Source of the DNA: Macrostomum lignano
Taxonomy: Eukaryota
Assembly (NCBI GenBank): GCA_002269645.1
Contig: NIVC01000215.1
Location: 434,001-498,000, forward strand
Reading direction: 5' to 3'
DNA: 64,000 nucleotides
Positions 11,258 to 63,964 of this stretch are shown one piece after another. Positions within the stretch are counted from its first letter, which is position 1. The number at the start of each line of letters is the position of its first letter. Made by a program: the position numbers and the translations under genes. Under the pieces are notes generated by a model. That model saw only the letters and a list, made by a program, of their open reading frames with translations, made no database searches and was not told where the DNA came from.

Positions 11258-11315
<58 letters not shown>

Positions 11316-12115: not shown

Positions 12116-13189
12116 GTGCATGTTCACACGCATGCACACTCCTGGCTTGTACCGCAACTGCTAATCACTGATATCTTGCCGAAGCAATTTTATTTTGATG
12201 CAATACTCGCACACGTAAAACTATGAGTATTTTTTCATTCCCCATGGTACATGTACAGTAAAGATGTGAGAGAAATGCTTTTTCTTTCAGTAAAAAATCT
12301 ACATATTTCACGCAACATTTTTTTCAGAATAAGCCCCGTTATATTTAGTTATCTAGACGTTTCGAAATTTCGGAATCTCACTTAACCAAATTTAAATAAA
12401 CGATGCATTATAACAAATACTTTTGTTTTTTTTATAGTGAATTTATTTAGAAGAGTAGCTACGTTACGTGTATTTGATTCCAAATAATTTCTATCTTAAT
12501 TTTCTATGTTCCAAAGCAGCTTTTATTCAATATAACGTGTCGTTCATGTGAATTTTTTGCTTTTTGTTTTTATAAAATTTTAAGAAAATTTAACAAAGTT
12601 AATTGCTTTTTAAATTTTTTGAGCTCTTTTCACAACTGAAAAATCCACCTTAAAGCAAACAGCTGTTACTATTAAAAAAATTGTGCTTTGTTACTGTGAC
12701 GTCTTGCTGCAATTTATTAAATCATATAACAAATCGAGGCTTTTAAGCAAAGTTTATAGATGTTTCGCAAAGTATAGTTTTTCGGTACTTTTAAATTTTC
12801 TCATAGTATGAGAGGGACTTCTTGTCTGGCTTAGCTAAATTTTTTTATTTAAAAATTTTGTTGTTAATTTGTCGCGTTGGAAAGAAATTAAATTTTGTTT
12901 TCTAAGAAATTGATTTTTAACGTGAGAGAATGCGTACGCAGTATATCCAAGAGTTTTTAAATTATGTATTTACGAGAGTGGTAATACTAATACAAACTTG
13001 CATAATATCTTCTATATTGTTTGACGATGTTAGGGCGATTGTAATAATTAAATATAGATGGTTTTTTGGTTGTTTATCAATTATTGAAAAGGTATTTTAA
13101 ATGTTCAGGTATTACAAAATATCTTACAGCTTCCGGAAACTTTAACAAAAAATAGTAATCGGTCCTTTTCAGGGGTTTCTAGTTAGGCT

Positions 13190-17417: not shown

Positions 17418-19059
17418 GATTGAACTGTACGGCCGATAACGGATCGAGCAAAAAACCAATATATAGGACAATTTTATATCGAATTTAGCGGATCGAATTC
17501 GATCAGCTTTGGAAGCAGAGGACTGCTTGATAAACAGTGGCACAGAACAGAAAATTTATGCAGCCAAAATTTACGCGCACTACAGTTTTCTCAGCGCATT
17601 TTTATTTGGCTTGAATTTTTTAGAACTGCGCGCACTGTTGAGTAAAGGTGCTTATCAACAATGTGCTCGCGATCAAGTGTGCACATATACGGTTACATGT
17701 ATGTGGACGAGAGGACGAATTCTCTGAACTTGAATCGGTTGCGTGCATTAAATCTCTCTTTTACTGCAAGAAATCTCTTCTGTGCATATACCACAGATAC
17801 TAAATACTAAAAGAAGGTGCAGTGTTATACTATCTGTGCTTCATGCATGTATAGTTTACCGCGGCCGGTGCTTATCTGCATGTAAGCTATATGCACATGT
17901 ACATTGAATCTTTTCTTCTGTATTACGTACTTTTGCATATTGAAAGTACGGGTATATGCATGTATAAGAACAGTAATAGCATTTTATTACTTATAATAAT
18001 CTCTGGAGTTATAAATAATTAATACATGTACGTAATTTCATGTTATATCATTAATCGAACTCCCGTATTTTGTGCATGTGTGTATCATGTGATGTTGATA
18101 TCCATGTATCGGCCGCCGGGAACATCGACACGTACTTACGCTCGTAAGAAAAATATAGAGTTAAGCGATACGCTAAATAAAGGTCTTGGAGTATATATGC
18201 AGATACTACGTAAATGAAGTCCACGGTTCTTAAAGCCTTAAAATGAAGAAAAAACAATTTTAAAAGAAGTTACATTATTTATTTGAATATAGATACACTT
18301 TTTTATAGTGTTAATTGCTATGCATGCATCTTTACCGTATATTGTTGTTATAAATGTTAGTATATTGTTTTTAGCTAATACATCTATAGTTGCAATAATA
18401 ACATTTTTTAAGTATCGCACCAGTGTGCATGCACGGTGAAACCATGCATTCCTGCAGCTGTCGCAGTCCAGTTGATCCGTCATCACCATCATTGACGCTG
18501 TTTCGGCAAAAAGGGCATTTTGGAGCTCGCCGACGCCCGCTAGTATAGGCATTGTTCAGATGCACGATGCAACGTACCCCAAGGCGCGACATCATTGAGG
18601 ACCGCGATGTTTCTACGAAAATTTACTTCCAAGAAGTGTTCACGGTTTAAACAAATTTGACATCGCATAACCACTTCTCACATTCTCTGGCTGGTGCAGC
18701 TATAATAATCATGACAGTGAGGCGGAAGGCCTTTTAGTTTCAATAGATGGAATGGCAGCGAAGAGTTTTGTGCTGCATTGCGTGTATATTTAAATGTACA
18801 CAGACTGCGCGAGATTGAGGGGCCTAGGGAGGTGCGAAAAGGTGGCGTGGCGTGATAGGCTACGCCGAAACCCCGGCTTAGCGAGCCGGCTAGCATGGCG
18901 CGCACCCACCCCACCTCAGCTAGACAGAGGTTTGGGGGCGTTTCCAGTGCGGCTGCACTGGTGCTGCCAGTCGCGTACAGTCTGGCCGCCACACAGCTCC
19001 CCCCAGCACCGAGCTAGGCCCCGAACGTCGGGTGGTAGCCGAGGCCGCGAGAATGCCGA

Positions 19060-23104: not shown

Positions 23105-24620
23105 CTAAGTATTCAAACTAGGTCTATGATGCTTAATGTGCAAGGCTTCCAACACTCTAAGCTTGCCATCAAATCTATATCTATCCAAAACAGTGAAAAG
23201 CTCAGTCAGCTCATGCTCACAACAAGCATTGCAACTAAGCAAGTGATCATGCATAGTAGAGTTATTCATTCTATGCTCCCTAGCCCTAGTGTACAGGTGC
23301 CTTTTGGTTTTTCCTATGTAGGAAATGCTCTGATCACCAGAACAACAAAATTGATAGATGACACTATCAGACAGTGCTCTAGGGGCATTTGACTTCAACC
23401 TGCTAACAAACTGGCCGATTTTGGCAGTCTGAAACACAACCATGACCCAAGAGTTGAAATACTTCAAGAAGGTTCTTTTATGCTTCTTTTCCAGAGTCAG
23501 GATAGGACTCCAAGGAATGGGAGTTTGATCAGCAATATGGAATTTGACCTTTTAGCTTCGTCAGTCAAACTAGACTCAGTCATTTTCTTAGTCAGAGATC
23601 TGTTCAGCACTTTACTAACAAAACCCCTAGGGAAACCGTTACATTGAAAAATGTCAGTGAGCTTGACAACTTCTTGGTGGAAAGATTGCCAAGTACTATA
23701 GATACTAAACGCTCTGTGTATCATGCACCCGACAAGACCAGCCTTCCATTGGCGCGGGCACAATGCATTAAAGTTGAGCATGAGACCAGTAAATGTGGGT
23801 TTGCAGTACACCTTAGTGCTAACAGTGTCCAGACTCAACTCAACCTCAATGTCAAGAAAGGGCAACTTCTTATCACCCCTTTCCATGGTAAACTGAATGT
23901 TTGGGTGAGTAGAGTTCAGCGCTTGGAGAAATTGACTTTGCTCACTAGCCTCATCGAAGATCGCAAAGGTATCATCAACATACCTCCTATAGAAGGTCGG
24001 AGCACAAGGAAAAAGACATCCACTGCTTCTCCCAGTGAGCCATGCAAATGTTAGCCAGCGTGGGAGCAAGCAGGCTCCCCATAGCACACCCATCAACTTG
24101 GCGATAATATTTGTCTTGAAAGAGAAAGATGCCCTGCGTAGCTAAAGTCAGCAGCTTCCTAAACACTGCTTTAGGCATTTCAGGAGGAGACTCAGCAAAG
24201 ACAAGATCAGTGGCAAGATCTAAAGCAAGCTTGCGAGGAATGTTTGTGAATAACGAAGTGACATCAAAGCTGAACACACTATCATTACCGTCCAGCCTCA
24301 CAGATTTCAGAGCTTCAATGAACTGATGGTTAGAATTGACACTAAACTCTTGGGCATTTTTGGCTTGATGATAGAGTCTAAAAACCTGGCTAACTTATAC
24401 TCAGCAGTATTAATCATAGACACAATGGGACGCAGGAGCTTGTCCTCTTTGTGGACTTTGCACAGGCCATACAACTGGCCAGGCTGGCTACCACTGGGCA
24501 TTATACATTTGTACATTTCATTATTCACAAACCTCTTCACCTGAGTTCTAATGTAGGTTTGGATACTGCATTCAGCCTTTAGCACAGGGTGCATCATTGT
24601 CACCTCATCGTTAGGACCTA
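23105..24620 (-). mobile_element. Penelope-like retroelement, RT + GIY-YIG endonuclease, frameshifted
   Basis: Four frames give LYGLCKVHK..LRPIVS, FDVTSLFTNIP, GCAMGS..APTLAN, YRRYVDDTF, HPNIQFTME, LPFLDI, and GIY-YIG VIYQFCC..YIGKTKRHL..R.REH..LEAL.I....PSLN. Confidence 0.92.
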
Positions 24621-33046: not shown

Positions 33047-36000
33047 ATGATGTCTGGAATTCGCGGCAATGTTGGCCGATCAGAAAGCATGCGAACTGGC
33101 GCTGTAAGTAGTATATTTCGGACTGATAGTTTCAAATAAATTAAATTATTTCCTTGTTAAATAAATTAAAGTTTTTTTAGCCACAGTTGCTACTTAGTTA
33201 GTAGGCGCTTAAGAAAGTTGCATGACATAGTTCTTACTAAGCCGACGTGTAACCCTTGGTCTTGTCTGTCTATGAGTTGTCACGCTGTCGGAGCGTGTCT
33301 ACTGGGGTTGGCAGTTAAGTAAATAAGTGCACACTCGCTGTGTTGGGGCGGTGTCTGTTCTCATGAATGGCTTGGTGGGTGTGCAATGGGGGGGGCTAGA
33401 AGTTATATAGCAGAGGGAATTCCCTCGCCTTGCTAAGACTCGGTTTGTAAGTGAAACTTGCTTAGCTGTATTTTTTCTGTTCATTCACGCGCTCAGTGCG
33501 TGCTACGCTTGGTTACAATAGAATATCTGGTTTAATCCAGTTGGCTTAAAGCTAACCCACACTTTTCCTGCGCTTTTTTGCTAGCACTAAAGCCTGTGAC
33601 ACTTTTAAGGTTGATGAGATTTTTGTGGCCATTTTAACAACAGACATTGAAATTGAATGACCAGACAGTTTTATTGAATGAGCAGAAATAGGGATTGTAT
33701 GAGCAGAAATAGGGATTGAATGGGCAGAAATAGGGATTGAATGAGCAGAAATAGGGATTGAATGAGCAGAAATAGGGATTGTATGAGCAGAAATAGGGAT
33801 TGTATGAGCAGAAATAGGGATTAAATGAGCAGAAATAGGGATTGAATGAGCAGAAATAGGGATTGAATGACCAGACATAGGGATTGAATGACCAGAAATA
33901 GGGATTGTACGAGCAGAAATAGAGATTGAATGAGCAGAAATAGGGATTGTATGGGCAGAAATAGGGATTATATGAGCAGAATAGGGATTGAATGAGCAGA
34001 AATAGGGATTGAATGAGCAGAAATAGGGATTGAAATGACCAGAAAAAGGGATTGAATGAGCAGAAATAGGGATTGAATGGGCAGAAATAGGGATTGAAAT
34101 GACCAGAAAAAGGGATTGAATGAGCAGAAATAGGGATTGAATGGGCAGAAATAGGGATTGAATGGACAGAAATAGGGATTGAATGAGCAGAAATAGGGAT
34201 TGAATGAGCAGAAATAGGGATTGAATGAGCAGAAATAGGGATTGAATGAGCAGAAATAGGGATTGAATGAGCAGAAATAGGGATTGAATGAGCAGAAATA
34301 GGGATTGAATGGGCAGAAATAGGGATTGAAATGACCAGAAAAAGTGATTGAAATGACCAGAAATAGGGATTGAATGAGCAGAAATAGGGATTGAATGAGC
34401 AGAAATAGGGATTGAATGAGCAGAAATAGGGATTGAATGAGAAGAAATAGGGATTGAATGAGCAGAAATAGGGATTGTATGAGCAGAAATAGGGATTGAA
34501 TGGGCAGAAATAGGGATTGAATGAGCAGAAACAGGGATTGAATGAGCAGAAATAGGGATTGAATGAGCAGAAATAGTGATTGAAATGACCAGAAATAGGG
34601 ATTGAATGAGCAGAAATAGGGATTGAATGAGCAGAAATAGGGATTGAATGAGCAGAAATAGGGATTGAATGAGCAGAAATAGGGATTGAATGAGCAGAAA
34701 TAGGGATTGTATGAGCAGAAATAGGGATTGAATGGGCAGAAATAGGGATTGAATGAGCAGAAACAGGGATTGAATGAGCAGAAATAGGGATTGAATGAGC
34801 AGACAACTGGCAATATTTTTAGTCGGTGGATTCTCACGACTCGGTCGGTGGCGGCTCGACTGGCAACGGAGGCAGCGGCGGCCCCGGCTCCAATGTGCGG
34901 CTGGGATTTGCTAATCTGCCCGATCAGATGCATCGCAAAGCGGTTAAGAAAGGCTTCAATTTCACTCTGATGGTGGTTGGCGAGAGCGGCCTGGGCAAGA
35001 GCACCCTGATTAGCAGCCTGTTCCAGCAGGACCTGTACAAGGACCGCGAGCTGGGCAGCGCCACAGAGAGAGTGAACAAGACTACTGAGATTGATAAGCG
35101 CCAAATTGAACTAGATGAGAAAGGCGTTAAACTGAGATTAACAGTTGTGGATACTCCCGGCTTTAATGACGCCATCAATTGTCAGGACTGCTGGCGTCCA
35201 ATCGAAGACTATATTGACAATACGTTTGAGCAATATTTTAAAGACGAATGCGGACTTAATCGAAAGAATATCGTCGATCATCGGGTACATTGTTGTCTGT
35301 ATTTTGTTAGCCCCTGCGGCCACGGACTCCGGCCTATCGATGTTGAACTCATGCGCAGATTGCACTCCAAGGTTTGCGCTGGTTTGTTATTAATGTCTGA
35401 CCTTCTTTACCCTCTCGACATCTATTCTGACCCTATTTACCCTCTCGACATCTATTCTGACCCTCCATTTACCCTCTCGAAATCTATTCTGACCCTCTAT
35501 TTACCCTCTCGACATCTATTCTGACCTTCTTCACCCTCTCGACATCTATTCTGACCCTTTTTACCCTCTAGACATCTATTCTGACCCTCTTTACCCTCTA
35601 GACATTTATTCTGACCCTATTTACCCTCTCGACATCTATTCTGATCCTATTTACCCTCTCGACATCTATTCTGACCCTCTTTACCCTCTCGACATCTATT
35701 CTGACCCTCCATTTACCCTCTTGACATCTATTCTGACCCTTTTTACCCTCTAGACATCTATTCTGACCCTCTTTACCCTCTCGACATCTATTCTGATCCT
35801 ATTTACCCTCTCGACATCTATTCTGACCCTATTTACCCTCTAGACATCTATTCTGACCCTCTTTACCCTCTCGACATCTATTCTGACCCTCTTTACCCTC
35901 TCGACATCTATTCTGACCCTCCATTTACCCTCTTGACATCTATTCTGACCCTTGATGTAACCGCCCTTGTCGCCTGCCCGCTCCGTAGAGAGACGAACGC

Positions 36001-39000
36001 ATAACTAGAGGGGGCAATGACCGTAGGCTGCCTATGACCGGGCAACGACCTGACGGACCTCCAGCACCAGACTGTCCCGCCCACATGATTAGTAGCTTTT
36101 GGTAGCGCTTCGTGACCAGAGGGCCAAGGACCCACATGGACCCCACCTGTAGCCAAGGTGCAATAGTTGGTCACTCGGTCATGGTATGACCGAGTGGCTG
36201 CCACCACTTTATGTGACCTGGCGCACCTGGATCTTTCTACCAGACCTCTCGAGGCTAGAGCCCCGCCTGGATTGGTTACCAGGGGATTTAGGCTAACAGG
36301 GGGGACGCATGCAGCCGAGTACAGGGACTCTGCTTGGGGCATGATCGGGAACTCTGGGCTCAATCCTGGAGGATTTCTCAGCAGGGGATCCTTTGTGGCT
36401 GTGAGCGAGGCTGACTTGCGACTTTGATTACTAAGAGTAGTATGAGGCGAACATGTACTGTCTACAGTTTAGATTGCTCAGGGCGAAGGGACGCGTCAGC
36501 ATGGGGTTGCAACCTTCCTACTGCCATTCTGTGCCAAGACTCGCTAATCCCTCTACTGCACGCACACGCGGCCCCGCAGCACGCACTCACAGGCGGGCTT
36601 TGCACGGGGAGAGGCCATTAGCTTACCCAAACTTCCTTATGCTTTGCCACCCCGGGAGAAAGGCTTAGCAAGCCATGAGTGAAATGATGGTGAAAGATTG
36701 AATAATGATGGAGTTAGTTAATAGTTAATAATTAGGCCCTTAGGCGAATAATCAGGCAATTAGGCGGCTTCACTATTGAGTAAAATACAGCAAAAGATAC
36801 GGTATCACAATTGGCTCAGCTCTCTAATCAGACAATGGAAAATAGGCAAACCCCGGATAAGCAAAGGCAATTAGAGCACAAATTAGTAACAGGAACTTAC
36901 CGGCAGCTGCACAGAGAGAGAGAGAGACGGAGTGACCGAGGGCGGCTGTAGGCTGCAGTCAGGCAGACAGTGAAGCGGCGATGCGCTGGAGCGACGAGGC
37001 GCTGATGTAGATCAGGCGATGCTGATGATGCTGGGCGGTATCAGACCGCTGGCCGATAGGCGAGCTCACTTGGGGAGCTAAGGATAACTTGGCGGTAACA
37101 GACCGCGGACCGGCAGGGATTCGTCTTATAGACGAATGGGTCAGAACTCAATCTGACTGCAAGTCCAAAGAAGGACGAGGAGAGGAAAAAAGGTGGAGGA
37201 TTCTCATGCCGAAATCGCTTCCTTTTATAGACCTCACAGCCGCCTCCTCAAGGTCGTTACCATGGCTCCCTCCCTCTGATTGGCTGCCGGCAGAATGACG
37301 TCAGAATGAGTCATGATGAGAAGCATGAGACCGGCATAGCAACATGAGAAATAGGGAAATTGCGCAATCCGGAGGTGGGGTGGGGGGATAATTGGCGCAG
37401 CGGGTGGTCGCGAAAGTGTTGCGCAAGCAAACATTGAGAACAATAGGGCTGGGGTCGAGAACAAAGGAATTGGAAATCGGGGATAGTTGGGGAAAACTGA
37501 GAACAATGGAAAAGTAAACATTGGAGAAAAGGTGATAATTAGGTGCGAAAACGAGAACAAAAGAAAGAGAAAATCGGAGAAAATGTGATAATTGGTGGGG
37601 GTCGAGAGAACAAAAGAAGCAAAAACGAGAACAATAGAAGCGGAGGTGGGGTGGGTGTCGCATGAGAAATTTGGGGAGGAGAACAATGGCGTGAGAAAAG
37701 GTTGCGCAAGAGAGGCGGGTGAGTCATCGATGAGTCATCGGGGGGAAGAAGGGGTCACACGACTTGCGTCACCGTTTGGGAGTTTGGGAGGGGATGGGGA
37801 GACGGTGAGCACACAAAATACTGTAAGTAGACACAGGGAAAGAGGGGACAGCGCAGGAAAAGAGTGCAGAGGGAGACAAAAAAAAGAGAGGAGATAGAGA
37901 AAGTACAGGAAGAATAGGGCGGAAACAGAAGAGATAGGGTAGAGGGGGAGGTACAGAAAGGGGTAGGGGGCTCCGGAAAGGCAGGTGTGGCGGCAGGAGA
38001 GACGGGACCAAGGCAGCAGGAGGGGTGCAGCAGAGCGGGAGTCTCCAGGCCCGGTCGGAGACCTGGCCGAGTCTCGACAGCTCTGTGCAGAGGGTGCACG
38101 GGATAGGAGGCACTTTCGAAAAAGTTCCCATGCCCTATCCCGCGACCAGAGCGTGGTTACATCACCCTCTTTACCCTCTCGACATCTATTCTGACCCTCT
38201 TTACCCTCTCGACATCTATTCTGACCCTATTTACCCTCTCGACATCTATTCTGACCCTATTTACCCTCTCGACATCTATTCTGACCCTATTTACCCTCTC
38301 GACATCTATTCTGACCCTATTTACCCTCTCGACATCTATTCTGACCCTCTTTACCCTCTCGACATCTATTCTGATCCTATTTACCCTCTCGACATCTATT
38401 CTGACCCTCTTTGACCCTCTCGACATCTATTCTGATCCTATTTACCCTCTCGACATCTATTCTGACCCTATTTACCCTCTCGACATCTGTTCTGACCCTC
38501 TTTACCCTCTCGACATCTATTCTGACCCTCTTTGACCCTCTCGACATCTTTTCTAACATTTTGTTTATCTCTTTACCTTTTCGACATCTCACTATAATTT
38601 TGCCATCCCTTCGATCAAATTGATCTCAAGCAATCTCTTTTATCTCTCTTATCCCAATCCCACTAATCCCATCCTCCCAGGTGAACATAGTTCCAATCAT
38701 AGCCAAGGCGGATACGCTGACCCAAGCCGAGCTGCGCGACTTAAAAGAGCGCGTGCTGGCCGACTTGGATCGGCACAAAATCCAGACCTACCGAATGCCC
38801 GACACCGACTCTGACGACGACGAAGAGACCCGACGTCAGGAGTCCGACATCCGGGCGTGCATTCCGTTCGCCGTGATTGGCAGCAACTGCGTGGTGGAGT
38901 CCGCCGATACTGGCCGACGGACTCGGGGCAGGCAGTATCCTTGGGGCGTTGTGGAGGTGAGCGTGGGTCAGGATTGTCAGCTTTGGGTCAGGACTGTCAG

Positions 39001-42000
39001 CTTTGGGTCAGGACTGTCAGTTTTGGGTCAGGACTGTCAGTTTTGGGTCAGGACTGTTAGCTTTGGGTCAGGATTGTCAGTTTTGGGTCAGGATTGTCAG
39101 TTTTGGGTCAGGATTGTCAGTTTTGGGTCAGGATTGTCAGTTTTGGGTCAGGATTGTCAGTTTGGGGTCAGGATTGTCAGCTTTGGGTCAGGACTGTCCG
39201 TTTTGGGTCAGGATTGTCAGTATTTGGTCAGGATTGTCAGCTTTAGGTCAGGACTGTCAGTTTTTGGTCAGGATCGTCAGTTTTTGGTCAGGATTATCAG
39301 TTTTTGGTCAGGATTGTCAGTTTTTGGTCAGGATCGTCAGTTTTTGGTCAGGATTATCAGTTTTGGGTCAGGATTGTCAGTTTTTGGTCAGGATCGTCAG
39401 TTCTGGGTCAGGATTATCAGTTTTGGGTCAGGATTATCAGTTTTGGGTCAGAATTATCAGTTTTGGGTCAGGATTATCAGTTTTGGGTCAGGATTGTCAG
39501 TTTTTGGTCAGAATCGTCAGTTTTTGGTCAGGATTATCAGTTTTGGGTCAGGATTGTCAGTTTTTGGTCAGGATCGTCAGTTCTGGGTCAGGATTATCAG
39601 TTTTGGGTCAGGATTGTCAGTTTTGGGTCAGGATTGTCAGTTTTGGGTCAGGATCGTCAGGATTATCAGTCTTTGGTCAGGATCGTCAGTTTTTGGTCAG
39701 GATTGTCAGTATTTGGTCAGGATTGTCAGTATTTGGTCAGGATTGTCAGTTTTTGGTCAGGATTGTCAGTCTTTGGTCAGGATCGTCAGTTTTTGGTCAG
39801 GATTATCAGTCTTTGGTCAGGATCGTCAGTTTTTGGTCAGGATTGTCAGTATTTGGTCAGGATTGTCAGTATTTGGTCAGGATTGTCAGTTTTTGGTCAG
39901 GATTGTCAGTCTTTGGTCAGGATCGTCAGTTTTTGGTCAGGATTATCAGTTTTTGGTCAGGATTATCAGTTTTTGGTCAGGATTATCAGCATCTAATCAC
40001 ATTTCATCTCAGGTTGAAAATCCCAAGCATTGCGACTTCGCTAAACTGCGGATCTTTCTACTCGGCACTCACATGCAAGACCTCAAGGACATCACCAAGG
40101 AGGTGCACTACGAGAACTACAGGGCCAAGTACATCACGGAGCGAATGTCGAAACGAAAGGGGGCGGTTCGAGACGACTTCGAGACTAGAAAGTGAGATTA
40201 ATTCTATGTCACGCTTACCCTCTCTACCCTCTCGTTACCCTCTTTTCCTCTCCTTACCCTCTCCTTGCCCTCTTTACTCTCCCTTAACATCTTCACCCTC
40301 TCCTTACCCTCTCCTTGCCCTCTCTACCCTCCCTTAACATCTTTACCCTCTCCTCACCCTGTTTACCCTTTTCTTGCTTTCTTTCCATTTTCGTCTGTAT
40401 AAATGGGATACTTAAAATTAAGCTACATTCATTTTCAACAGCATTCTAGCCATGACATAAATGCGATCGTTTTCATTGCAGAAGCAAGAACACAACCGAA
40501 GCCAATTTTGAAGCAATTGTGGACACCGAAGGTCTTCTAAAAGAAAAAGAAGACGAGGTTTGTAAACGATATTTTTTAACTTGAAAATTAAGTTCATGCA
40601 TTGTCCTTTTGTTTAGCTGCATAAATGAATAGCAGTTAAGCATTCATAAAGCACGCTATTAGCGCGTGACAGACTGTGGCCCTGGCATTCCTGGGGAACC
40701 CCTTTTATATTCTAAAAATAGAACAAAAACGTTTTGCGTGCGTGCGCGCCTCACGCGATCTTTCTAGGTGTTAGTAGTACGTTTTTGACAGATTTTGCGA
40801 GTACTGCTTGTAGAGTGCAAAAATTTATTGAACAAGTCCTAAAGTATATATATAGTTAAAGCGCCATTAAGGTGTTCTGCACCGCTAAAGTATTTATGAA
40901 GTCTAGGAGTATGACGTATAAGCTTCGTCTGTATTACTCTGACGAATAGTTGTTTCTTTTTATATTGAAACTACCGAAAATATAAAGCTGGTTTTCTGGA
41001 ACTCTTTGAGCAATTAGGGGCTGAAGGGACGTAAATTAGGGGATAAAAAGGGAGAGAAATTAGGAGATAATAAAAGGAGATATTTAGGGGATAAGAAGGA
41101 GAGGAATTAGGGGATGAAGGGAGATGAATTAGGTAATGAAGGGAGGGAAATTTGTGGATGAAAAGAGACGAATTAGGGGATGACGGGAGGGGAATTAGGG
41201 CATGACGGGCGGAATTAGGGGATGGCGGAAGGGGAATTACGGGATAAAAGGAGAGGAATTAGGGAATGAAGCGATAGGAATTAGGGGATAAGAGGAGCGG
41301 AATTAGGGGATGAAAGAAGATGAATTAGGGGATGATATGAGGGGAATTAGGGCATGACGGGCGGAATTATGGGGATGGCGGAAGGGGAATTAGGGGATAA
41401 AAGGAGAGGAATTAGGGGATAAGAGGAGCGGAATTAGGGGATGGAAGAAGGGGAATTAGGGGATAGGAGGGGAATTAGAGGATAGGAGGGGAATTAGGGG
41501 ATAGGAGGGGAATTAGGGGATAGGAGGGGAATTAGGGGATAGGAGGGGAATTAGGGGATGAAGGGAAGGCTGGCTGCAATGAAGGATTTATAGATTAAGT
41601 TTAAATGAGAACTCCAAAAAAACTTATAAATCATATTTCTCCAGCTATTCAATGCCAAATAGCGGTTTTGTAAAAAACATTTCGCGTTTTTTCAGTCGTA
41701 CTTTTCTAACCCCCCCCCCTGGCTGCTTCCATAGTTTCATAGCGCCCTCTCTTATCTGCATGTCTGTTTGGGTTTTTTACCCTGGAAAACTTGGATCTAT
41801 TCAGATTTGCTCAAAAGTTGCCTACAGCGAGCGGGGTGTTAATTTCGGTTTCATGCTTCATGTTAGGCTTGTGGTTTTTTGTGGGATTTCTGCGGGTTTT
41901 TTCTATTAAAAATATTTTCCTTCTTACAATTTTTGTCTACAGATACGTCGTATGCAGCAAATGTTGCAGCAATTGCAGCAGCAACAGCAGTCTTCTGCTT

Positions 42001-45646: not shown

Positions 45647-48600
45647 CATTGGAATCAGGGATGAAGGGATGAGAGTTTTGGGGGGTACAGAGATGAAGGG
45701 TTGAGAGAGAGTACCATTGGAATCAGGGGTGAAGGGATGAGAGTTTTGGGGGAGTCAGAGATGAAGGGTTGAGAGAGAGTACCATTGGAATCAGGCGTGA
45801 AGGGATGAGAGTTTTGGGGGAGTCAGAGATGAAGGGTTGAGAGAGAGTACCATTGGAATCAGGGGTGAAGGGATGAGAGTTTTGGGGGAGTCAGAGATGA
45901 AGGGTTGAGAGAGAGTACCATTGGAATCAGGCGTGAAGGGATGAGAGTTTTGGGGGAGTCAGAGATGAAGGGTTGAGAGAGAGTACCATTGGAATCAGGG
46001 GTGAAGGGATGAGAGTTTTGTGGGAGTCAGAGATGAAGGGTTGAGAGAGAGTACCATTGGAATCAGGCGTGAAGGGATGAGAGTTTTGGGGGAGTCAGAG
46101 ATGAAGGGTTGAAAGAGAGTACCATTGGAATCAGGCGTGAAGGGATGAGAGATTTGGGGGAGTCAGAGATGAAGGGTTGAGAGAGAGTACCATTGGAATC
46201 AGGCGTGAAGGGATGAGAGTTTTGGGGGAGTCAGAGATGAAGGGTTGAGAGAGAGTACCATTGGAATCAGGCGTGAAGGGATGAGAGTTTTGGGGGAGTC
46301 AGAGATGAAGGGTTGAGAGAGAGTACCATTGGAATCAGGCGTGAAGGGATGAGAGATTTGGGGGAGTCAGAGATGAAGGGTTGAGAGAGAGTACCATTGG
46401 AATCAGGCGTGAAGGGATGAGAGTTTTGGGGGAGTCAGAGATGAAGGGTTGAGAGAGAGTACCATTGGAATCAGGCGTAAAGGGATGAGACAAAGGGCTT
46501 AGTTTCGTTCTATTTGACAAAGCAGTTTCCAATTTGCCATTTAATGCCAGGTTCTTCAACGCGCCCAAGAGGAGATGCTGAACTTTCAAGAAACCGGCTC
46601 AAGCGTGATGGAGCTGTCCCATCGCGGTAAAACGTTTAAATCGGTGATCTCCGAGGCGGAGAAGCTCACCAGACAGTTGCTCAATGTGCCGGATAACTTC
46701 CGGATTCTGTTTATGCAGGGAGGCGGCTGTGGACAATTCGCTGCTGTCCCATTGAATCTGGCGGGTGAGCACTGATGGGCTGCTAATCTACTCTCCTCAG
46801 TGATCTAATTGTGTGATGGGTTGCTAATCTACTCTCCTCAGTGATCTAATTGTGTGATGGGTTGCTAATCTACTCTCCTCAGTGATCTAATTGCATAAAG
46901 GGTTGCTAATCTACTCTCCTCAGTGATCTAATTGTGTGATGGGTTGCTAATCTACCCCCTCACCCCTGCAGGCAGCCCGGGAGCCACCGTGGACTACATT
47001 GTCACTGGCAGGTGGTCGGAGTCCGCTGCCAAAGAGGCAGAAAAGTACTGCAAGGTGCGCAAAGTGCACGCGCCCAAGCCGCACGCCTCTGATTCGTCTG
47101 ACAGCGAGGACAGCGAAGAGGAATGGTGGTCAGAGCTGTCTGATAACGCCGCCTACGTGTACATGTGCGACAACGAGACCGTTGACGGAGTCGAGTTTAA
47201 GTGTCCGCCAAGGACTCCACCAGGTGTACCCCTGGTAGCCGACATGTCGTCGAATATGATGAGCCGTCCGATTGACTTCAGCAAGTACGGGCTGGTGTTC
47301 GCTGGTGCTCAGAAGAACCTTGGACCTGCCGGTGTCACCGTGGTTATTGTCCGCGAGGACCTTATGGACGGCCGGGCCTTGCCGTTCTGTCCCAGTGTTC
47401 TCAGCTACCATGTGAGTGGATTGCTAATCTAGCCAGTGTGCTCAATGAGATGATGGTGGAATGCTAATCTAGCCAGTGTGCTCAATGGGATGATGGTGGA
47501 TTGCTAATATAGTTAGTGTGCTCAATGAGATGATGGTGGAATGCTAATCTAGCCAGTGTGCTCAATGGGATGATTGTGGATTGCTAATCTAGCCAGTGTG
47601 CTCAATGGGATGATGGTGGAATGCTAATCTAGTTAGTGTGCTTAGCTACCATGTGAGTGGATTGCTAATCTAGCCAGTGTGCTCAATGGGATGATTGTGG
47701 ATTGCTAATCTAGTTAGTGTGCTCAGCTACCATGTGAGTGGATTGCTAATCTAGCCAGTGTGCTCAATGGGATGATTGTGGATTGCTAATCTAACCAGTG
47801 TGCTCAATGAGATGATAGTGGATTGCTAATCTAGCCAGTGTGCTCAATGGGATGATTGTGGATTGCTAATCTAGCCAGTGGGCTCAATGGGATGATTGTG
47901 GATTGCTAATCTAGCCAGTGTGCTCAATGAGATGATGGTGGATTGCTAATCTAGTTAGTGTGCTCAGCTACCATGTGAGTGGATTGCTAATCTAGCCAGT
48001 GTGCTCAATGGGATGATTGTGGATTGCTAATCTAACCAGTGTGCTCAATGAGATGATAGTGGATTGCTAATCTAGCCAGTGTGCTCAATGGGATGATTGT
48101 GGATTGCTAATCTAGCCAGTGGGCTCAATGGGATGATTGTGGATTGCTAATCTAGCCAGTGGGCTCAATGGGATGATGGTGGATTGCTAATCTAGCCAGT
48201 GTGCTCAATGAGATGATGGTGGATTGCTGATGAGGAAAAATGCATTTAAAGGAAGCTGTATTAAGCGACATTGATAATATATCAAACTCCTACCCAATTT
48301 ACCCCAACAACAGGTAACCAGCCGCAACGATTCGCTGTACAACACGCCGCCAACCTTCAGCATCTACGTCACTGGCCTGGTGATGCAGTGGGTTCGCGAT
48401 TCTGGCGGTGTGGCCCGTATGCAGGAGCTGTCCCGCGAGAAATCGTCGCTTCTCTACAGTTTGATTGAAAATTCTCAGGGTTTCTACTAGTAAGTAGAGC
48501 GAACGCGTTTTCTTTTATTTTTAATAACTTTAAAAAAGCACCCCATGTTCTGTTTTTAATGAATTTTAAACCATAGTAAAGAAAGTGAAAGTTAAGTTCA

Positions 48601-55730: not shown

Positions 55731-56337
55731 CCACGATTAGCGCTAGATATACAAAATAGTTGTTCCAGTTTGTGTACTCTACCAATCCTTGAGAGCCAAG
55801 TGTGTACACGATTAAGGAAGTTCCAAGGAAAATAGCTCGTAGTCGCAAAGTCGCAAACTAGTTGTAGTTTACCAACCCACACAATTCTGTCAAAACAATT
55901 TATAGCCTACGCACTCACGTAATATGTCTGCGCTGTCATTATTTTCAGTTTTTTCTAGCCTAGAACTTTATCATCTACTAAAACTATGGGCAGATTGAGA
56001 AAAAGCTATTCAAAATATATTGTCCCTTAGTAAGGAACACACGAATGCAACGAAGGGATTGCTACAGGCTTTTTCGAGGACCTCACACGGCATATGGCCA
56101 ACGCACAGTCCCACTCTCTCTCTCTCTCTCTCTCTTTATCGGGCCACTTTTTTCCTTTCTCGGCTGTCCAACGAGAGATCCGATCGAATCACTTCCGCTT
56201 AATAGAGTCGTCTCAGCATTATATATAGCATAGAAAATGAGATCCTTGAGCAAGGAGTTTGCCTACCGAGTTGTTCAAAGGCAGGAAGCCTATATTTTAC
56301 GTATTGGAAATTATTGAAAAAACAACATCTCAAAGAA

Positions 56338-57410
56338 ATGTACCTGGAGCTGTTCAACGCCCTGACTTTCAGCTTAGGCGTTATTCTGATCGCTACTGGT
56401 TACTTCTTGGTCGGTCAGAAATCACAGGTGTACGATCTGTACGGTCCGACCTTTCCTATGGCACTGCTGATTGTCATATCGATTGGTATTACAATTGCCG
56501 CTGTGGTGTCTGACACTTCGTTTTATAAGAGTAGCTCTTCGGCTGGTAGCTGTCAGGTGAGTGTGAGAAAAATAGCTGACAGCCAACTACCATAGCAAAA
56601 AATATGGGTAGCAGCCAATATGCATAGCAACCTATATACATAGCAACCAATATGCATAGCAACCAATATGCATGAAAATCAATATGCATAGCAACCAACA
56701 GACATAGCAACCAAGAGGCATAGCAACCAACATACATAGCAACCAATATTCGTAGCAACTAATGATGCAAAAGGTAACCAAAAGGTGCAAACCAAACGTT
56801 ATGCATAGAAACAAAATCATTCTATCAACCAATTCACATAGCAACCATCAGATATCTTGCGCATATTACTTACCTTCCTTCGCAGATTCTAATCTTCATC
56901 CTATTGATAGTGCTCATACTCAGCCTGGAGCTGTCGGCGGCCGTAGCCGGACTCGCCCTGCCAGACTACATCCGCAGCATCGCCAGCCGGAACATCCAGC
57001 AGCAGATGGCCAACTATCCTAAAGCCAACGCTAGCGCCTCCTTTGCCGACGGTCGCGAACCCTGGATCGATGTGGTGCAGCGCAGCTTTGGGTGCTGCGG
57101 TTTAAACGGCTCGTCGGACTGGTTGCATCATCAAGGTCGACCGCCGGCAAGTTGTTGCACAACGCGGGTGAGTCAGTCAACGCCTTTGACAGGCTGCAAC
57201 GCCAGCAGTGTGCACTCGGCCGGATGCGATTACGTCATTAAAGCTTGGCTCACTGGCGAAGTTCGCGTATTCGCTGGCATCGCCGCTGGCATCTGCTTGC
57301 TGCAGTTGGTCAGCGTGGGAGCGATGCTTTATAAAAAGTCTACCTGGCGACCGAAACTGTTGCCGAATGAGGTAGAAACTAAGGCTGACTTTGTTGATGG
57401 CACTCGTTGA
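56338..57410 (+). CDS. Tetraspanin (divergent)
   Basis: Exons 56338(start uncertain)-56556 and 56886-57410, phase 0. Four hydrophobic segments, CCG motif (QRSFGCCGLNGSSDW), PASCC and GC in the large extracellular loop. Confidence 0.85.
56590..56770. repeat. Degenerate 16-bp CATAGCAACCAATATG array, tetraspanin intron
   Basis: Direct inspection. Confidence 0.8.
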
Positions 57411-59164: not shown

Positions 59165-62100
59165 TCACGGCGAAGGCGTTTTGTAGACAATGAAGATGTG
59201 CTTTCCGTAGCGGAATACGAATGAGTAGCCGGGCTCGTGTCCGTAGTAGCACCAGAACTCGCCGTTGACCACGACCACGTGCCACAGGAAGCCGAGCTTG
59301 CTGTCTAGCTGGTTCTTGATCCACTTGGGCGCGTCCTGATAAATTGTATGTATAGATTAAAATTTGGTAAGTCAACAATGTACATTGATCATTAAAGGCA
59401 ATGTAAATTTCAAACGGGCCACTTAAATAGTGAGCAACCATGAGCGAAAAAAATTAAGTTGTACTTAGTTGTACATTTTACTGTACATAATACGGACGGT
59501 TTCGATAGGCACTACCAATAACTGTGATATATAATGGAGTCACTGAGCTGAATCAGGGCTTGCCAAAAAGCGTTAGAATTAACCACTGCAAACAAAGTAG
59601 CTCGTATATTTTAGTGCAAGCATATCTATGATCAATCATATCTATGATCAATCGTATCTATGATCAATCGTATCTATGATTAATCGTATCTATGATCAAT
59701 TGTATCTATGATCAATCGTATCTATGACCAATTGTATCTATGATCAATTGTATCTATGATCAATCGTATCTATGATCAATTGTATCTATGATCAATTGTA
59801 TCTATGATCAATTGTATCTATGGTCAATCGTATCTATGATCAATCGTATCTATGATCAATCGTATCTATGATCAATCGTATCTATGATCAATCGTATCTA
59901 TGATCAATCGTATCTATGATCAATCGTATCTATGATCAATCGTATCTATGATCAATCGTATCTATGATCAATCGTATCTATGATCAATCGTATCTATGAT
60001 CAATCGTATCTATGATCAATCATATTTATGATCAATCGTATCTATGATCAATCGTATCTATGATCAATCATATTTATGATCAATCGTATCTATGATCAAT
60101 CGTATCTATGATCAATCGTATCTATGATCAATCGTATCTATGATCAATCATATCTATGATCAATCGTATCTATGATCAATCGTATCTATGATTAATCGTA
60201 TCTATGATCAATCATATCTATGATCAATTGTATCTATGATCAATCATATTTATGATCAATCGTATTTATTGACGCACAGAATTGCGCGCTGATGCTGATG
60301 ATAAAAGATCGAGCTTGAAGAGAATTTTGTCTTTTCCGTTAATTTTCCGTCAGGAGACGATAACGAGCAGGATTAAGTAGCCATAAAGATTAATTTAAAA
60401 AAAAAAACTTGGACTGAGATTGATCTAATCTTTGTGCATCTGTCAACATAGATTGCGTCTGTGTTGTGCGTTATTTTCCAAACTTAGAGTCCTTTGGTTT
60501 ATAATCATACTTTTTGTTTATTCAAAGGATCATAATAAATTCAAAATTCGCAAACTAAATTTTGTTTAAGAGATGAATACAAAGTAACCAATGCTATTTT
60601 AAGCTTAAGGACACCAAGCACTTCGCCATAGACAGCTGGAAGGAATTAAAAGCTTTTTTAAACTCGGGAACTCTTAGTGCCAGGCTAACACAACGCTCGT
60701 CACGGGATCGTCCAATTCGAAGGGCAATGAGATCAAATTCAGTCACGAGGTGAAGCTGGGCAAAGCTGCTAAGTGGCTGGCCGTGTGCAGCGACTCCAGC
60801 GGCTTCGCTAGCGACAGCTCCAGTCGCGTCGTTGCCGCACAGTCCGGAAGCGACGGTAGCGAGGCTCTGCCTTAGCCCTGCATATTTGTGTCATACGTAT
60901 TAGAAAACTCAAGCTCTAACGCGGACCACCTGCTGGTTGTGTCTTTGCTGATTGCTCAGAATTCTGGAGTGACCGTGACGGACCTGAGCGGCTTGAAGTT
61001 GGTTCAAATCAAACCGAAAAGAAGAGTCGGGGGACTTGGGCTACTAAAAGTCCAACACTGTGTATGTAAGCTGCTGCTATGGCCAAGTTGCCGACTTTGA
61101 CACCGACACCGGAGAGATGAAGTACCTCACAAAGCCGATGTGGTAACAGTAATTCCAAGCTAGGCAACCTGGTCATTCACGACAATCATTTGCTAGTGAC
61201 AGACCTCGAGCAAAAACAGGTTCTCAGGTTGCGCAAGCACATGGACCGGCCAACCGGCGGCGACATCGGGTTTGACGAGCCCCACGGGCTGGCGGTGGTT
61301 GTGGTAGACCAGCAAGAGCTCCTTTTGGTGGCTGACAAGGACAACAATCGGATTGTGGTGCTGAACATCCTGCGATGACGTCACTTGTGCATGTTCTTTC
61401 AATTGTTTTTTGCTTCGTCAGGATATGCATAAAGCCGATGTAAATTCATTCATGTTGGGTAATTTTATTCGAAAGCCTGAGTTTTTCACATTGGAAGCTG
61501 AGATGACTCTTTCTGATTGACGAAAAAGTGATTTAAAAACGCTTGAAAAAAGCACAGCTATAATAGATTGCTGACAGGCATTTGCGCAAAGGTGAAGGAA
61601 TATTGATGTAGTGATGATGCAGTGATTGATTATGCAGTGATGAAGCAAGTGATGATGCAGTGATGATGCAGTGATGATGCGGTGATGATGCAGTGATGAT
61701 GCAATGATGATGCAGAGATTATGCAGTGATGAAGCAAGTGATGATGCAATGATGACGCAGTGATTATGCAGTGATGAAGCAAGTGATGGATGATGCAGTG
61801 ATGATGCAATGATGACGCCGTGATGAAGCAAGTGATGATGCATTGATGATGCAATGATGACGCAGTGATGATGCAGTGATGATGCAGTGATGATGCAATG
61901 ATGACGCAGTGATGATGCAGTGATGATGCAGTGATGATGCAATGATGACGCAGTGATGATGCAAGTGATGATGCATTGATGATGCAATGATGACGCAGTG
62001 ATGAAGCAAGTGATGAAGCAAGTGATGATGCAATGATGACGCAGTGATGATGCAGTGATGATGGTGCTATTGTACGCATAGAATATAGCCTAAGCTGATG

Positions 62101-63964
62101 AATAGACAACAAACAAATTTAAACACGAACTCTCAGCAAACCTTCATATGCTGACTCAGCCGCAAGCCTTCAAGGCAGACCTCTGCCACAGTGGCCTGCA
62201 TTGCCTGATCCATGTCGCCCGAGATGAACTGCACCGAGTGGCCGGAGTTTTCCTCGGGTCCCGAACTGCCTGCCGCCGATTTGGCCTGCAATTCTTGACG
62301 CCTAAAATGGCGATTGAAAAAATTACAGTAGTAAATCAAAATTTCAATAAAATCATCAGGCATGGACACTCCCAGCGCCTAGGGAGTTGGCGCATCTAAG
62401 AAAAGTTTCTTTTTGAAGCAAAAATTTATAAATAATAACCATAGAAGATAAAAACTTGCATGCTTTCAACATTGAGCCCGAGGGTGTCGCAAAACGACTG
62501 CAGATCGATCAGGCCGCTGTTATCGCTGTCCAATATTCGCATCCACTTCTGCGGTTTCAGGGGCGAGGAAAGGCGCATTGATTGTTGTGCATGGAAACTG
62601 CACGGAGACAGGCACTGAGACAGGCACTGAGACAGGCACTGAGACAGGCACTGAGACAGGCACTGAGACAGGCACTGAGACAGGCACTGAGACAGGCACT
62701 GAGACAGGCACTGAGACAGGCACTGAGACAGGCACTGAGACAGGCACTGAGACAGGCACTGAGACAGGCACTGAGACAGGCACTGAGACAGGCACTGAGA
62801 CAGGCACTGAGACAGGCACTGAGACAGGCACTGAGACAGACACTGAGACAGGCACTGAGACAGGCACTGAGACAGGCACTGAGACAGACACTGAGACAGG
62901 CACTGAGACAGGCACTGAGACAGGCACTGAGACAGGCACTGAGACAGGCACTGAGACAGGCACTGAGACAGGCACTGAGACAGGCACTGAGACAGGCACT
63001 GAGACAGGCACTGAGACAGGCACTGAGACAGGCACTGAGACAGGCACTGAGACAGGCACTGAGACAGGCACTGAGACAGGCACTGAGACAGGCACTGAGA
63101 CAGGCACTGAGACAGGCACTGAGACAGGCACTGAGACAGGCACTGAGACAGGCACTGAGACAGGCACTGAGACAGGCACTGAGACAGACACTGAGACAGG
63201 CACTGAGACAGGCACTGAGACAGGCACTGAGACAGGCACTGAGACAGGCACTGAGACAGGCACTGAGACAGGCCCTGAGACAGGCACTGAGACAGGCACT
63301 GAGACAGGCACTGAGACAGGCACTGAGACAGGCACTGAGACAGGCACTGAGACAGGCACTGAGACAGACACTGAGACAGGCACTGAGACAGGCACTGAGA
63401 CAGGCACTGAGACAGGCACTGAGACAGGCACTGAGACAGGCACTGAGACAGGCCCTGAGACAGGCACTGAGACAGGCACTGAGACAGGCACTGAGACAGG
63501 CACTGAGACAGGCACTGAGACAGGCACTGAGACAGGCACTGAGACAGGCACTGAGACAGGCACTGAGACAGGCACTGAGACAGGCACTGGGGCAGACACT
63601 GAGACAGGCACTGAGACAGGCACTGAGACAGGCACTGAGACAGGCACTGAGACAGGCACTGAGACAGGCACTGAGACAGGCACTGAGACAGGCACTGAGA
63701 CAGGCACTGAGACAGGCACTGAGACAGGCACTGAGACAGGCACTGAGACAGGCACTGAGACAGGCACTGGGGCAGACACTGAGACAGGCACTGAGACAGG
63801 CACTGAGACAGGCACTGAGACAGACAAAGACGCAGACAAAGACTCACCCGCACAAAGCTGTCATCGCTGCCCTGCTGCTTCATGTAGGCGGCCAAATCGT
63901 TAGTGGCGATTGCGCCTCGACCTTCACGATCCACGGCCAGCCAGGCGTCCTTGAACCCGTCCAT
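59165..63964 (-). CDS. EF-hand + dynein light chain-like protein (tegument allergen-like, TAL family)
   Basis: Exons 63964-63848, 62548-62460, 62301-62142, 59335-59165 (178 aa). EF-hand loops [12 protein letters not shown] and [13 protein letters not shown]-terminal DLC domain [54 protein letters not shown], read directly from the minus strand because it is not in the ORF track. Confidence 0.88.
59632..60270. repeat. 16-bp minisatellite, TAL intron 3
   Basis: Unit TATCTATGATCAATCG. Confidence 0.95.
60610..61378 (+). pseudogene. NHL-repeat (beta-propeller) pseudogene nested antisense in TAL intron 3
   Basis: The last piece [31 protein letters not shown] matches the NHL consensus. Upstream pieces ([37 protein letters not shown]) are broken by in-frame stops (~60873, ~61100) and frameshifts. 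Confidence 0.65.
61610..62065. repeat. GCAGTGATGAT-type low-complexity array, TAL intron 3
   Basis: Direct inspection. Confidence 0.9.
62606..63835. repeat. 12-bp minisatellite, ~100 copies, TAL intron 1
   Basis: Unit GAGACAGGCACT (sense strand TGCCTGTCTCAG). Confidence 0.97.

What the first reader, a model, noticed from the sequence alone, without database searches (positions are those of the whole stretch)
59165..63964. Hidden TAL-type (EF-hand + dynein light chain) gene in what looks like a free-living flatworm genome
Seen: four minus-strand exons join in frame to give 178 aa, with two EF-hand-like loops, a linker and a complete DLC-like domain; the DLC exon is below the ORF cutoff. Established: this fusion defines the tegument allergen-like proteins (e.g. 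Sm22.6, Sm21.7), best known from parasitic flatworms. Inference: if the host is non-parasitic, the family predates the tegument and has an ancestral epidermal or ciliary role. EF loop 1 ends in Asp and loop 2 lacks the position-12 Glu, so Ca2+ binding may be weak.
Basis: partly seen in the sequence, partly recalled or inferred. Interest (0 to 1): 0.7.

Follow-up and report, generated by a model that had tools for sequence, protein, structure and literature searches.

The report
TAL-type gene in free-living flatworm

Summary
Four minus-strand exons (63964-63848, 62548-62460, 62301-62142, 59335-59165) splice to 178 aa. That product is identical to GenBank BOX15_Mlig003538g1 of Macrostomum lignano, and the window is contig NIVC01000215.1. 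Intron 2 uses a GC-AG splice site, which is why a plain GT-AG join breaks the frame.

Two paralogues share the 117/89/x/171-nt exon plan. A second genomic copy differs by 7 substitutions, all synonymous.

Pfam finds Dynein_light (60 bits) and an EF-hand pair. The protein aligns end to end with Sm21.7 (E 4e-25) and Fasciola CaBP4, and the family profiles match at hhalign probability 100%. It is therefore a TAL/CaBP family member.

M. lignano has at least 11 such sequence clusters. The window gene sits in a Macrostomum-specific expansion.

The gene is not hidden: it is annotated, with transcript-derived models, though only as a hypothetical or EF-hand protein. The papers I could search call the family specific to parasites or trematodes, and this gene contradicts that. 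An epidermal or ciliary role is untested.

Verdict: a new member of a known kind, of moderate interest.

The parts
63848..63964 (-). Exon 1 (ATG at 63964; aa 1-39): first EF-hand, helix-loop-helix
   Evidence: The 117-nt length is the same in paralogues P0002 and P0007.
63896..63931 (-). EF-hand loop 1, [12 protein letters not shown] (aa 12-23). Non-canonical: Glu at position 3, Arg at position 5, Asp at position 12.
62549..63847 (-). Intron 1 (1299 nt, GTGAGT...CAG), almost filled by a 12-nt tandem repeat of 102 copies (62600-63823)
   Evidence: It is 507 nt in the second genomic copy.
62460..62548 (-). Exon 2 (89 nt; aa 40 to the second base of codon 69): second EF-hand
   Evidence: An identical 89-nt exon is present in paralogues. 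It is an exact match in the second copy.
62495..62530 (-). EF-hand loop 2, [12 protein letters not shown] (aa 46-57). Ser replaces Glu at position 12.
62302..62459 (-). Intron 2 (158 nt), a GC-AG intron (GCAAGT...TTTTAG), phase 2
62142..62301 (-). Exon 3 (160 nt; aa 69-122): linker (disordered at aa 80-89 in the model), then the first strand and first helix of the DLC-like domain. The domain starts near 62228.
59336..62141 (-). Intron 3 (2806 nt, GTTTGC...TATCAG). It holds an 11-nt repeat array (61604-62063), a 16-nt repeat array (59623-60269) and a frameshifted NHL-repeat relic on the + strand (about 60700-61380).
59165..59335 (-). Exon 4 (aa 123-178 plus TGA): second helix and the beta-sheet of the DLC-like domain ([37 protein letters not shown])
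   Evidence: The 171-nt length is the same in paralogues. It is an exact match in the second copy.

Best explanation
[quoted passage not shown] It encodes a 178-aa cytosolic protein of the TAL/CaBP family, which has an N-terminal two-EF-hand lobe, a flexible linker and a C-terminal LC8-type dynein-light-chain-like domain.

Shown:
- the gene model
- purifying selection on the protein
- end-to-end homology to Sm21.7, FhCaBP4 and the cestode and trematode 'tegument antigens'
- a predicted EF-pair plus LC8 fold
- membership of a multi-gene, partly tandem Macrostomum family

Inferred:
- Like its solved relatives, it probably forms a homodimer through the strand-swapped DLC-like domain and acts as a small adaptor or regulatory subunit, with the EF lobe as the sensing or binding module.
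- Both EF loops lack canonical ligands: loop 1 has Arg at position 5 and Asp at position 12, and loop 2 has Ser at position 12. It probably binds Ca2+ weakly or not at all, as shown for SmTAL3, and would then work as a Ca2+-independent paralogue.
- The fusion arose no later than the common ancestor of Macrostomorpha and Neodermata, so before the neodermatan tegument existed.
For: Gene model:
- The spliced product exactly matches P0001.
- The window equals NIVC01000215.1 and the annotated gene span is 59165-63964.
- The GenBank models of this assembly come from RNA-seq and transcript assemblies (PMC5730564).
- The same exon plan is found in paralogues.

Selection:
- The second copy differs at 7 of 537 CDS positions, all synonymous, against about 15 of 158 in intron 2. 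All splice sites are kept.

Family:
- Pfam Dynein_light 60 bits plus an EF-hand pair.
- In the PDB profile search, FhCaBP4 scores 4e-30 over profile positions 2-171. The FhCaBP2 and Clonorchis Tegu20.8 domains rank above calmodulin and LC8.
- The exhaustive HMMER search retrieves Sm21.7, Smp_169200, and Clonorchis, Paragonimus, Taenia and Echinococcus 'Tegument antigen' full length.
- BLASTP against Sm21.7 gives 27% identity and E 4e-25.
- hhalign gives probability 100% and E 1.5e-58.

Fold:
- The AF2 model has pLDDT 83.
- The best Foldseek hit is FhCaBP4 (E 5.5e-13, 180 columns). The DLC half matches LC8 at TM about 0.85.

Ca2+:
- SmTAL3, with two non-functional EF-hands, does not bind Ca2+ (PMC4300400).

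Dimer:
- All three SmTALs and FhCaBP4 are dimers (PMC4300400; PMC12347358).
Against: - No expression, localisation, Ca2+-binding or oligomerisation data for this protein were available to me.
- EF-hand_7 is just under Pfam's gathering score for the whole protein (27.4 against 30).
- The inter-domain geometry of the model is unreliable (pTM 0.49; rmsd 17.9 A to FhCaBP4 over the full length).
- Deep branches of my NJ tree are weakly supported, so the number of ancestral subfamilies is uncertain.
- I could not show presence in planarians, other free-living flatworms or non-flatworm phyla. The unnamed environmental homologues have no taxonomy.
Confidence: 0.88

Rival explanations
1. Independent (convergent) fusion. 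Macrostomum joined an EF-hand pair to an LC8 gene on its own, so the protein resembles TALs without being homologous as a fusion.
For: Both domains are common and mobile. The Macrostomum DLC halves keep the LC8-like 'WH' motif where Sm21.7 and FhCaBP4 have 'WQ'. The window gene lies in a Macrostomum-only clade.
Against: Each half separately scores better against TAL halves than against calmodulin or LC8. The Tegu20.8 EF domain scores 60.9 bits against about 51 or less for calmodulin-type proteins. The FhCaBP2 DLC domain scores 59-62 bits against about 42-43 for LC8. Alignments run unbroken through the linker. Macrostomum sequences are not monophyletic (0 of 100 bootstraps). One of them, P0026, groups with other taxa, including a cestode at 59%.
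Confidence: 0.05
2. Decaying duplicate or pseudogene that only looks intact.
For: The DV1 genome has extensive recent duplication (PMC5730564). The introns are swollen with tandem repeats, the splice donor of intron 2 is non-canonical, and both EF loops are degenerate.
Against: The ORF is complete. Both copies encode an identical protein with only synonymous differences, while the intron diverged by about 9%. Splice sites are conserved. The annotation is transcript-based. Degenerate EF loops are the rule in functional family members: only 17 and 16 of 69 are canonical.
Confidence: 0.03
3. Two neighbouring genes wrongly joined: an EF-hand gene (exons 1-2) and an LC8 gene (exons 3-4).
For: The introns are long (1.3 and 2.8 kb) and the DLC part lies far from the EF part.
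Against: Paralogues with introns of only 71-103 nt have the same four exons and the same phases. The DLC half has no start codon of its own in frame at an exon start. The product aligns end to end with single-chain TALs.
Confidence: 0.02
4. Contaminating DNA from a parasitic flatworm in the assembly.
For: All named non-Macrostomum relatives are parasites.
Against: The gene sits in a 784-kb M. lignano contig with a second syntenic copy, and a tetraspanin neighbour is kept in both. There are at least 11 paralogue clusters on several large contigs. Identity to any parasite protein is below 30% for the window protein itself.
Confidence: 0.01

Closest known systems
Schistosoma mansoni TAL proteins (for example Sm21.7/SmTAL2, UniProt P32070, and Smp_169200)
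   Same: Same architecture and size: two EF-hands, a linker and a DLC-like domain in 178 aa against 180-184 aa. Collinear end-to-end alignment at 27-29% identity, E 4e-25 and 1e-22. Degenerate EF loops are also common in this family.
   Different: The host is free-living and has no neodermatan tegument. There is no one-to-one orthology, because the window gene is in a Macrostomum-specific clade. The DLC part keeps the LC8-like WH motif where Sm21.7 has WQ. Nothing is known about immunogenicity or location.
Fasciola hepatica CaBP4 (PDB 9voa), CaBP2 (5fwz, 5fx0), and Clonorchis sinensis Tegu20.8 (5x2d, 5x2e)
   Same: Best solved-structure relatives by sequence (4e-30, full length) and by fold (Foldseek E 5.5e-13, 180 columns). 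The segments that form the strand-swapped dimer in FhCaBP4 align with conserved segments here.
   Different: FhCaBP4 has a canonical EF2 loop ending in Glu (DADENGKITLEE) and switches on Ca2+ (PMC12347358). The window protein has Ser at that position. Its linker is shorter and Gly/Ser-rich, and the model gives it no confidence (pLDDT below 50 for aa 80-89).
Canonical dynein light chain LC8 / DYNLL (Pfam PF01221)
   Same: The C-terminal 85 aa have the LC8 fold, with TM about 0.85 and rmsd about 2 A. They pass the Pfam gathering score.
   Different: LC8 is a stand-alone protein of about 89 aa. Here the domain is fused behind an EF-hand pair, and it scores lower against LC8 (about 42 bits) than against TAL DLC-like domains (59-62 bits).

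Membership tests
TAL / flatworm CaBP family (EF-hand + DLC-like) | N-terminal pair of EF-hand-like motifs | tested here: met
   For the N-terminal 70 aa, Pfam EF-hand_7 scores 30.0 bits (gathering score 30) and EF-hand_1 scores 28.3 bits (25.4). For the whole protein, EF-hand_7 scores 27.4 bits. The Clonorchis Tegu20.8 EF domain scores 60.9 bits. The model shows four helices with short strands in both loops.
TAL / flatworm CaBP family (EF-hand + DLC-like) | C-terminal dynein light chain type 1-like domain | tested here: met
   PF01221 scores 60 bits against a gathering score of 29.1 and covers profile positions 4-86 of 86. Foldseek matches LC8 at TM about 0.85.
TAL / flatworm CaBP family (EF-hand + DLC-like) | Both domains in one polypeptide of about 170-210 aa, in the order EF, linker, DLC | tested here: met
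   The spliced product is 178 aa and equals the annotated protein. Paralogues with short introns have the same exon plan.
TAL / flatworm CaBP family (EF-hand + DLC-like) | Full-length sequence homology to established members | tested here: met
   Sm21.7 E 4e-25. FhCaBP4 4e-30. hhalign against 15 named neodermatan members gives probability 100%, E 1.5e-58 and 174 columns. The Macrostomum profile retrieves them in an exhaustive search.
TAL / flatworm CaBP family (EF-hand + DLC-like) | Ca2+ binding by at least one EF-hand (not universal: SmTAL3 binds none) | not testable with these tools
   Both loops are non-canonical by sequence, so binding is predicted to be weak or absent. This needs a biochemical assay. 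SmTAL3 is the precedent (PMC4300400).
TAL / flatworm CaBP family (EF-hand + DLC-like) | Homodimer through the DLC-like domain | not testable with these tools
   Only a monomer model could be made. The interface segments align with those of FhCaBP4.
TAL / flatworm CaBP family (EF-hand + DLC-like) | Location in the syncytial tegument and an IgE-allergen role (the origin of the name) | not testable with these tools
   M. lignano is free-living with a cellular ciliated epidermis (established knowledge). No localisation data were found.
TAL / flatworm CaBP family (EF-hand + DLC-like) | Restriction to parasitic flatworms, as stated in the literature | tested here: not met
   The organism is M. lignano. 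This is a statement about taxonomic range, not a molecular feature. The result shows that the stated range is too narrow. It does not show that the protein lies outside the family.
Canonical LC8 / DYNLL dynein light chain | Stand-alone protein of about 89 aa made of the PF01221 domain alone | tested here: not met
   The protein is 178 aa with an N-terminal EF-hand pair. It scores lower against LC8 than against TAL DLC-like domains.

The most novel reading that the evidence does not exclude
The EF-hand/DLC fusion was already a multi-gene family in the last common ancestor of rhabditophoran flatworms, with a general cytoskeletal or epidermal role, and was later recruited into the parasite tegument. 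If so, TALs are not parasite-specific targets. M. lignano, which is transgenic and RNAi-tractable, could finally reveal what this family does; its function has stayed unknown since the 1990s.
Probability: 0.55. Interest if true: 0.5.

Novelty: new member of a known kind. Interest (0 to 1): 0.38.

Why it matters
TAL/CaBP proteins are leading vaccine, diagnostic and drug-target candidates in schistosomes and liver flukes. They are repeatedly justified as specific to parasites or trematodes (PMC4300400; PMC12347358, 2025; PMC3317908).

A diversified set of full-length family members in a free-living, early-branching flatworm shows that the fusion is older than parasitism and older than the neodermatan tegument.

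It also offers a safe, genetically tractable laboratory animal in which the still unknown cellular function can be studied.

The gain is a correction and an opportunity, not a new kind of molecule. The proteins are already in GenBank and UniProt with their Pfam domains.

Tried and rejected
1. Exon 2/3 join with the nearest GT donor (62455) and the acceptor AG at 62303/62302. It breaks the frame.
2. GT donor 62455 with the acceptor AG at 62287/62286. It is in frame and gives 174 aa. I rejected it because the annotated protein, the second copy and the paralogues all support the GC-AG join that gives 178 aa.
3. The word-indexed protein search, run with the single protein, with a 5-sequence profile and with a 54-sequence profile. 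It returned almost only Macrostomum proteins, so it could not give the taxonomic range.
4. The supplement of PMC12058154 (BLAST of the S. mansoni proteome against free-living flatworms). The text held for it showed only count tables for the TAL gene ids.
5. Literature searches for any report of TAL or EF+DLC proteins in Macrostomum, planarians or other free-living flatworms found none. One 2012 table lists an S. mansoni 'tegumental protein' with weak hits in Schmidtea and Macrostomum ESTs, without comment (PMC3510090).
6. Monophyly of all Macrostomum members was rejected (0 of 100 bootstraps).
7. The 512-aa mechanical ORF 62426-63964 is read-through of the in-frame 12-nt intronic repeat, not coding sequence.
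Full report
**What is there**

On the minus strand of 59165-63964 there are four exons with consensus splice sites:

| Exon | Coordinates | Length |
|---|---|---|
| 1 | 63964-63848 | 117 nt |
| 2 | 62548-62460 | 89 nt |
| 3 | 62301-62142 | 160 nt |
| 4 | 59335-59165 | 171 nt, with TGA |

Joined, they give 537 nt and 178 aa.

My first attempt used the nearest GT donor after exon 2. It either broke the frame or, with a downstream acceptor, gave 174 aa. The true join uses a GC-AG intron with donor AT|GCAAGT. With that join the product is identical, residue for residue, to a database protein.

**Whose genome, and is the gene hidden?**

The protein search returned a 178-aa GenBank protein, BOX15_Mlig003538g1 of Macrostomum lignano, plus paralogues from the same species.

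The contig look-up shows that the window is the reverse strand of NIVC01000215.1 in assembly GCA_002269645.1 (Mlig_3_7). The 14.8 kb that could be compared is identical. The annotated gene spans exactly 59165-63964.

The GenBank annotation of that assembly was made from genome-guided RNA-seq and transcript assemblies, not from ab initio prediction (PMC5730564). The exon joins therefore rest on transcript evidence, although I did not see the reads myself.

The gene is not hidden, but it is named only 'hypothetical protein' or 'EF-hand domain-containing protein'.

**Is the model real and under selection?**

A second genomic copy (NIVC01002063.1, L002) encodes the identical protein.

- The two CDSs differ at 7 of 537 positions, all synonymous.
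- The short non-repetitive intron 2 differs at about 15 of 158 positions.
- All six splice sites are kept, including the GCAAGT donor.

Paralogues P0002 and P0007 have tiny to moderate introns (71-1058 nt). They have the same exon plan of 117/89/142/171 nt, with ordinary GT donors at the position of the GC donor.

This rules out a chance ORF chain, a mis-join of two genes and a decaying pseudogene.

The long introns of the window gene are mostly tandem repeats:
- 12 nt, 102 copies, in intron 1
- 11 nt, about 40 copies, in intron 3
- 16 nt, about 40 copies, in intron 3

The 12-nt array keeps the frame open. This produces the meaningless 512-aa ORF in the mechanical list.

**What the protein is**

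Pfam gives the following:
- Dynein_light: 60 bits against a gathering score of 29.1, covering almost the whole model.
- EF-hand_7: 30.0 bits for the N-terminal part and 27.4 bits for the whole protein, against a gathering score of 30.
- EF-hand_1: 28.3 bits for the N-terminal part, against 25.4.

A profile of the Macrostomum paralogues was searched against all PDB sequences:

| Hit | Score |
|---|---|
| Fasciola hepatica CaBP4, full length (profile 2-171) | E 4e-30 |
| FhCaBP2 DLC-like domain | 59-62 bits |
| Clonorchis Tegu20.8 EF domain | 60.9 bits |
| Clonorchis Tegu20.8 DLC-like domain | 45.7 bits |
| Calmodulin-type proteins | about 51 bits or less |
| LC8 | about 42-43 bits |

An exhaustive HMMER search of 1.8 billion representatives gave 26 hits below 1e-30, and about 100 of the best 150 carry both halves.

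Every named full-length hit is a flatworm:
- M. lignano itself
- a monogenean (Cichlidogyrus)
- trematodes: Schistosoma Sm21.7 and Smp_169200; Clonorchis, Opisthorchis and Paragonimus 'Tegument antigen'; Trichobilharzia; Calicophoron
- cestodes: Taenia and Echinococcus 'Tegument antigen'; Schistocephalus 'Antigen Sm21.7'

Direct comparisons:
- BLASTP of the window protein against Sm21.7 gives 27% identity over 180 columns and E 4e-25.
- BLASTP against Smp_169200 gives 29% identity and E 1e-22.
- hhalign of the Macrostomum profile against 15 named neodermatan members gives probability 100%, E 1.5e-58 and 174 aligned columns that run through the linker.

The AlphaFold2 model has mean pLDDT 83. 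It shows four EF helices, a linker helix, a disordered stretch at aa 80-89 and an LC8-type fold. Its best PDB match is FhCaBP4 (E 5.5e-13, 180 columns), and the C-terminal half superposes on LC8 at TM about 0.85.

All sequence-level defining features of the TAL/CaBP family are met.

**The family in Macrostomum**

At least 11 sequence clusters exist: P0001-P0010, P0026 and P0157. Several lie within about 35 kb on one contig.

In a bootstrapped NJ tree:
- The window gene falls in a Macrostomum-only expansion of nine representatives (90%).
- All Macrostomum members together are never monophyletic (0 of 100).
- P0026 groups with unnamed environmental sequences (83%) and, weakly, with a cestode protein (59%).

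The deep branches are poorly resolved. I therefore claim only that the fusion predates the Macrostomorpha-Neodermata split. I do not claim how many subfamilies existed then.

**Likely mechanism**

By homology with the solved and characterised relatives, the protein should be a cytosolic homodimer held by the strand-swapped DLC-like domain. The EF lobe would be tethered by a flexible linker (PMC12347358; PMC4300400). This is inferred, not shown.

Loop 1 ([12 protein letters not shown]) has Glu, Arg and Asp at positions 3, 5 and 12. Loop 2 ([12 protein letters not shown]) has Ser at position 12. Paralogues P0002, P0005-P0008, P0157 and P0026 keep a canonical loop 2.

Across 69 family members only 17 loop-1 and 16 loop-2 sequences are canonical. 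SmTAL3, with two degenerate loops, binds no Ca2+. I therefore expect this paralogue to bind Ca2+ weakly or not at all.

Nothing here bears on an epidermal or ciliary role.

**Novelty**

Papers state that the family is 'found only in parasitic flatworms' (PMC4300400), 'found only in trematodes' (PMC12347358, 2025) or 'from parasitic platyhelminths' (PMC3317908). One says 'unique to the platyhelminths' (PMC10212073).

Ten full-text searches found no paper that reports these proteins in Macrostomum or any other free-living flatworm. The nearest is an uncommented table entry from 2012 (PMC3510090). The searchable library lacks most subscription journals, so a prior mention cannot be excluded.

The sequences and their Pfam domains are public. 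I therefore rate this as a new member of a known kind. It is a useful correction of the family's stated range, of moderate interest.

Noticed in passing
window 62302-62459 (-): Intron 2 is a GC-AG intron (GCAAGT donor). It is kept in the second genomic copy, while paralogues use GT at the same site.
   Followed up: yes
window 62600-63823; 61604-62063; 59623-60269: The introns are swollen by tandem arrays of 12-nt (102 copies), 11-nt (about 40 copies) and 16-nt (about 40 copies) units. The 12-nt array stays in frame and creates a spurious 512-aa ORF (62426-63964). In the second copy intron 1 is only 507 nt, so the array length is unstable.
   Followed up: partly
window about 60700-61380 (+), inside intron 3: Frameshifted relic of an NHL-repeat protein on the opposite strand (Pfam NHL 26.8 bits for ORF 61190-61378). 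About 294 nt of it is kept at 90% identity in the second copy. No gene is annotated there.
   Followed up: partly
window 56266-57410 (+): A tetraspanin gene (271 aa; Pfam Tetraspanin 74 bits for its largest exon) lies next to the 3' end of the TAL-type gene, convergently transcribed. The same neighbour is present beside the second copy (L002).
   Followed up: partly
L002 (NIVC01002063.1) 10001-13767: A second genomic copy encodes the identical 178-aa protein with 7 synonymous differences. This fits the known partial genome duplication of the DV1 line.
   Followed up: yes
L004, L005 (NIVC01000042.1, about 157.8-211.5 kb): At least three TAL-type paralogues (P0007, a 181-aa gene and P0002) lie within about 35 kb. 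This is a tandem cluster, mirrored in part on NIVC01000459.1.
   Followed up: partly
window 741-10170 (+); 14925-17543 (-); 34826-40195 (+); 46932-47432 (+); 23497-24096 (-): Other genes in the window are a PPIP5K/VIP1-like gene (RimK and His_Phos_2 pieces), a beta-lactamase-fold (LACTB-like) gene, a septin, and a class-V aminotransferase (phosphoserine aminotransferase-like). There is also an ORF that looks like reverse transcriptase but had no Pfam hit. Many of their introns also hold tandem repeats that stay open as long ORFs.
   Followed up: partly
P0011 (JGI/IMG metagenome contig, 1274 nt); P0168 (UniProt A0A1I8IZR3): An environmental 281-aa homologue carries the source name 'DNA-binding transcriptional MerR regulator', which looks like a misannotation. 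A 459-aa M. lignano UniProt entry named 'Dynein light chain 1, cytoplasmic' has the TAL-type unit at residues 285-457 and may be a merged model. Unnamed homologues from Tara Oceans (MERC), JGI/IMG and Logan have no taxonomy and could be further free-living flatworms.
   Followed up: no
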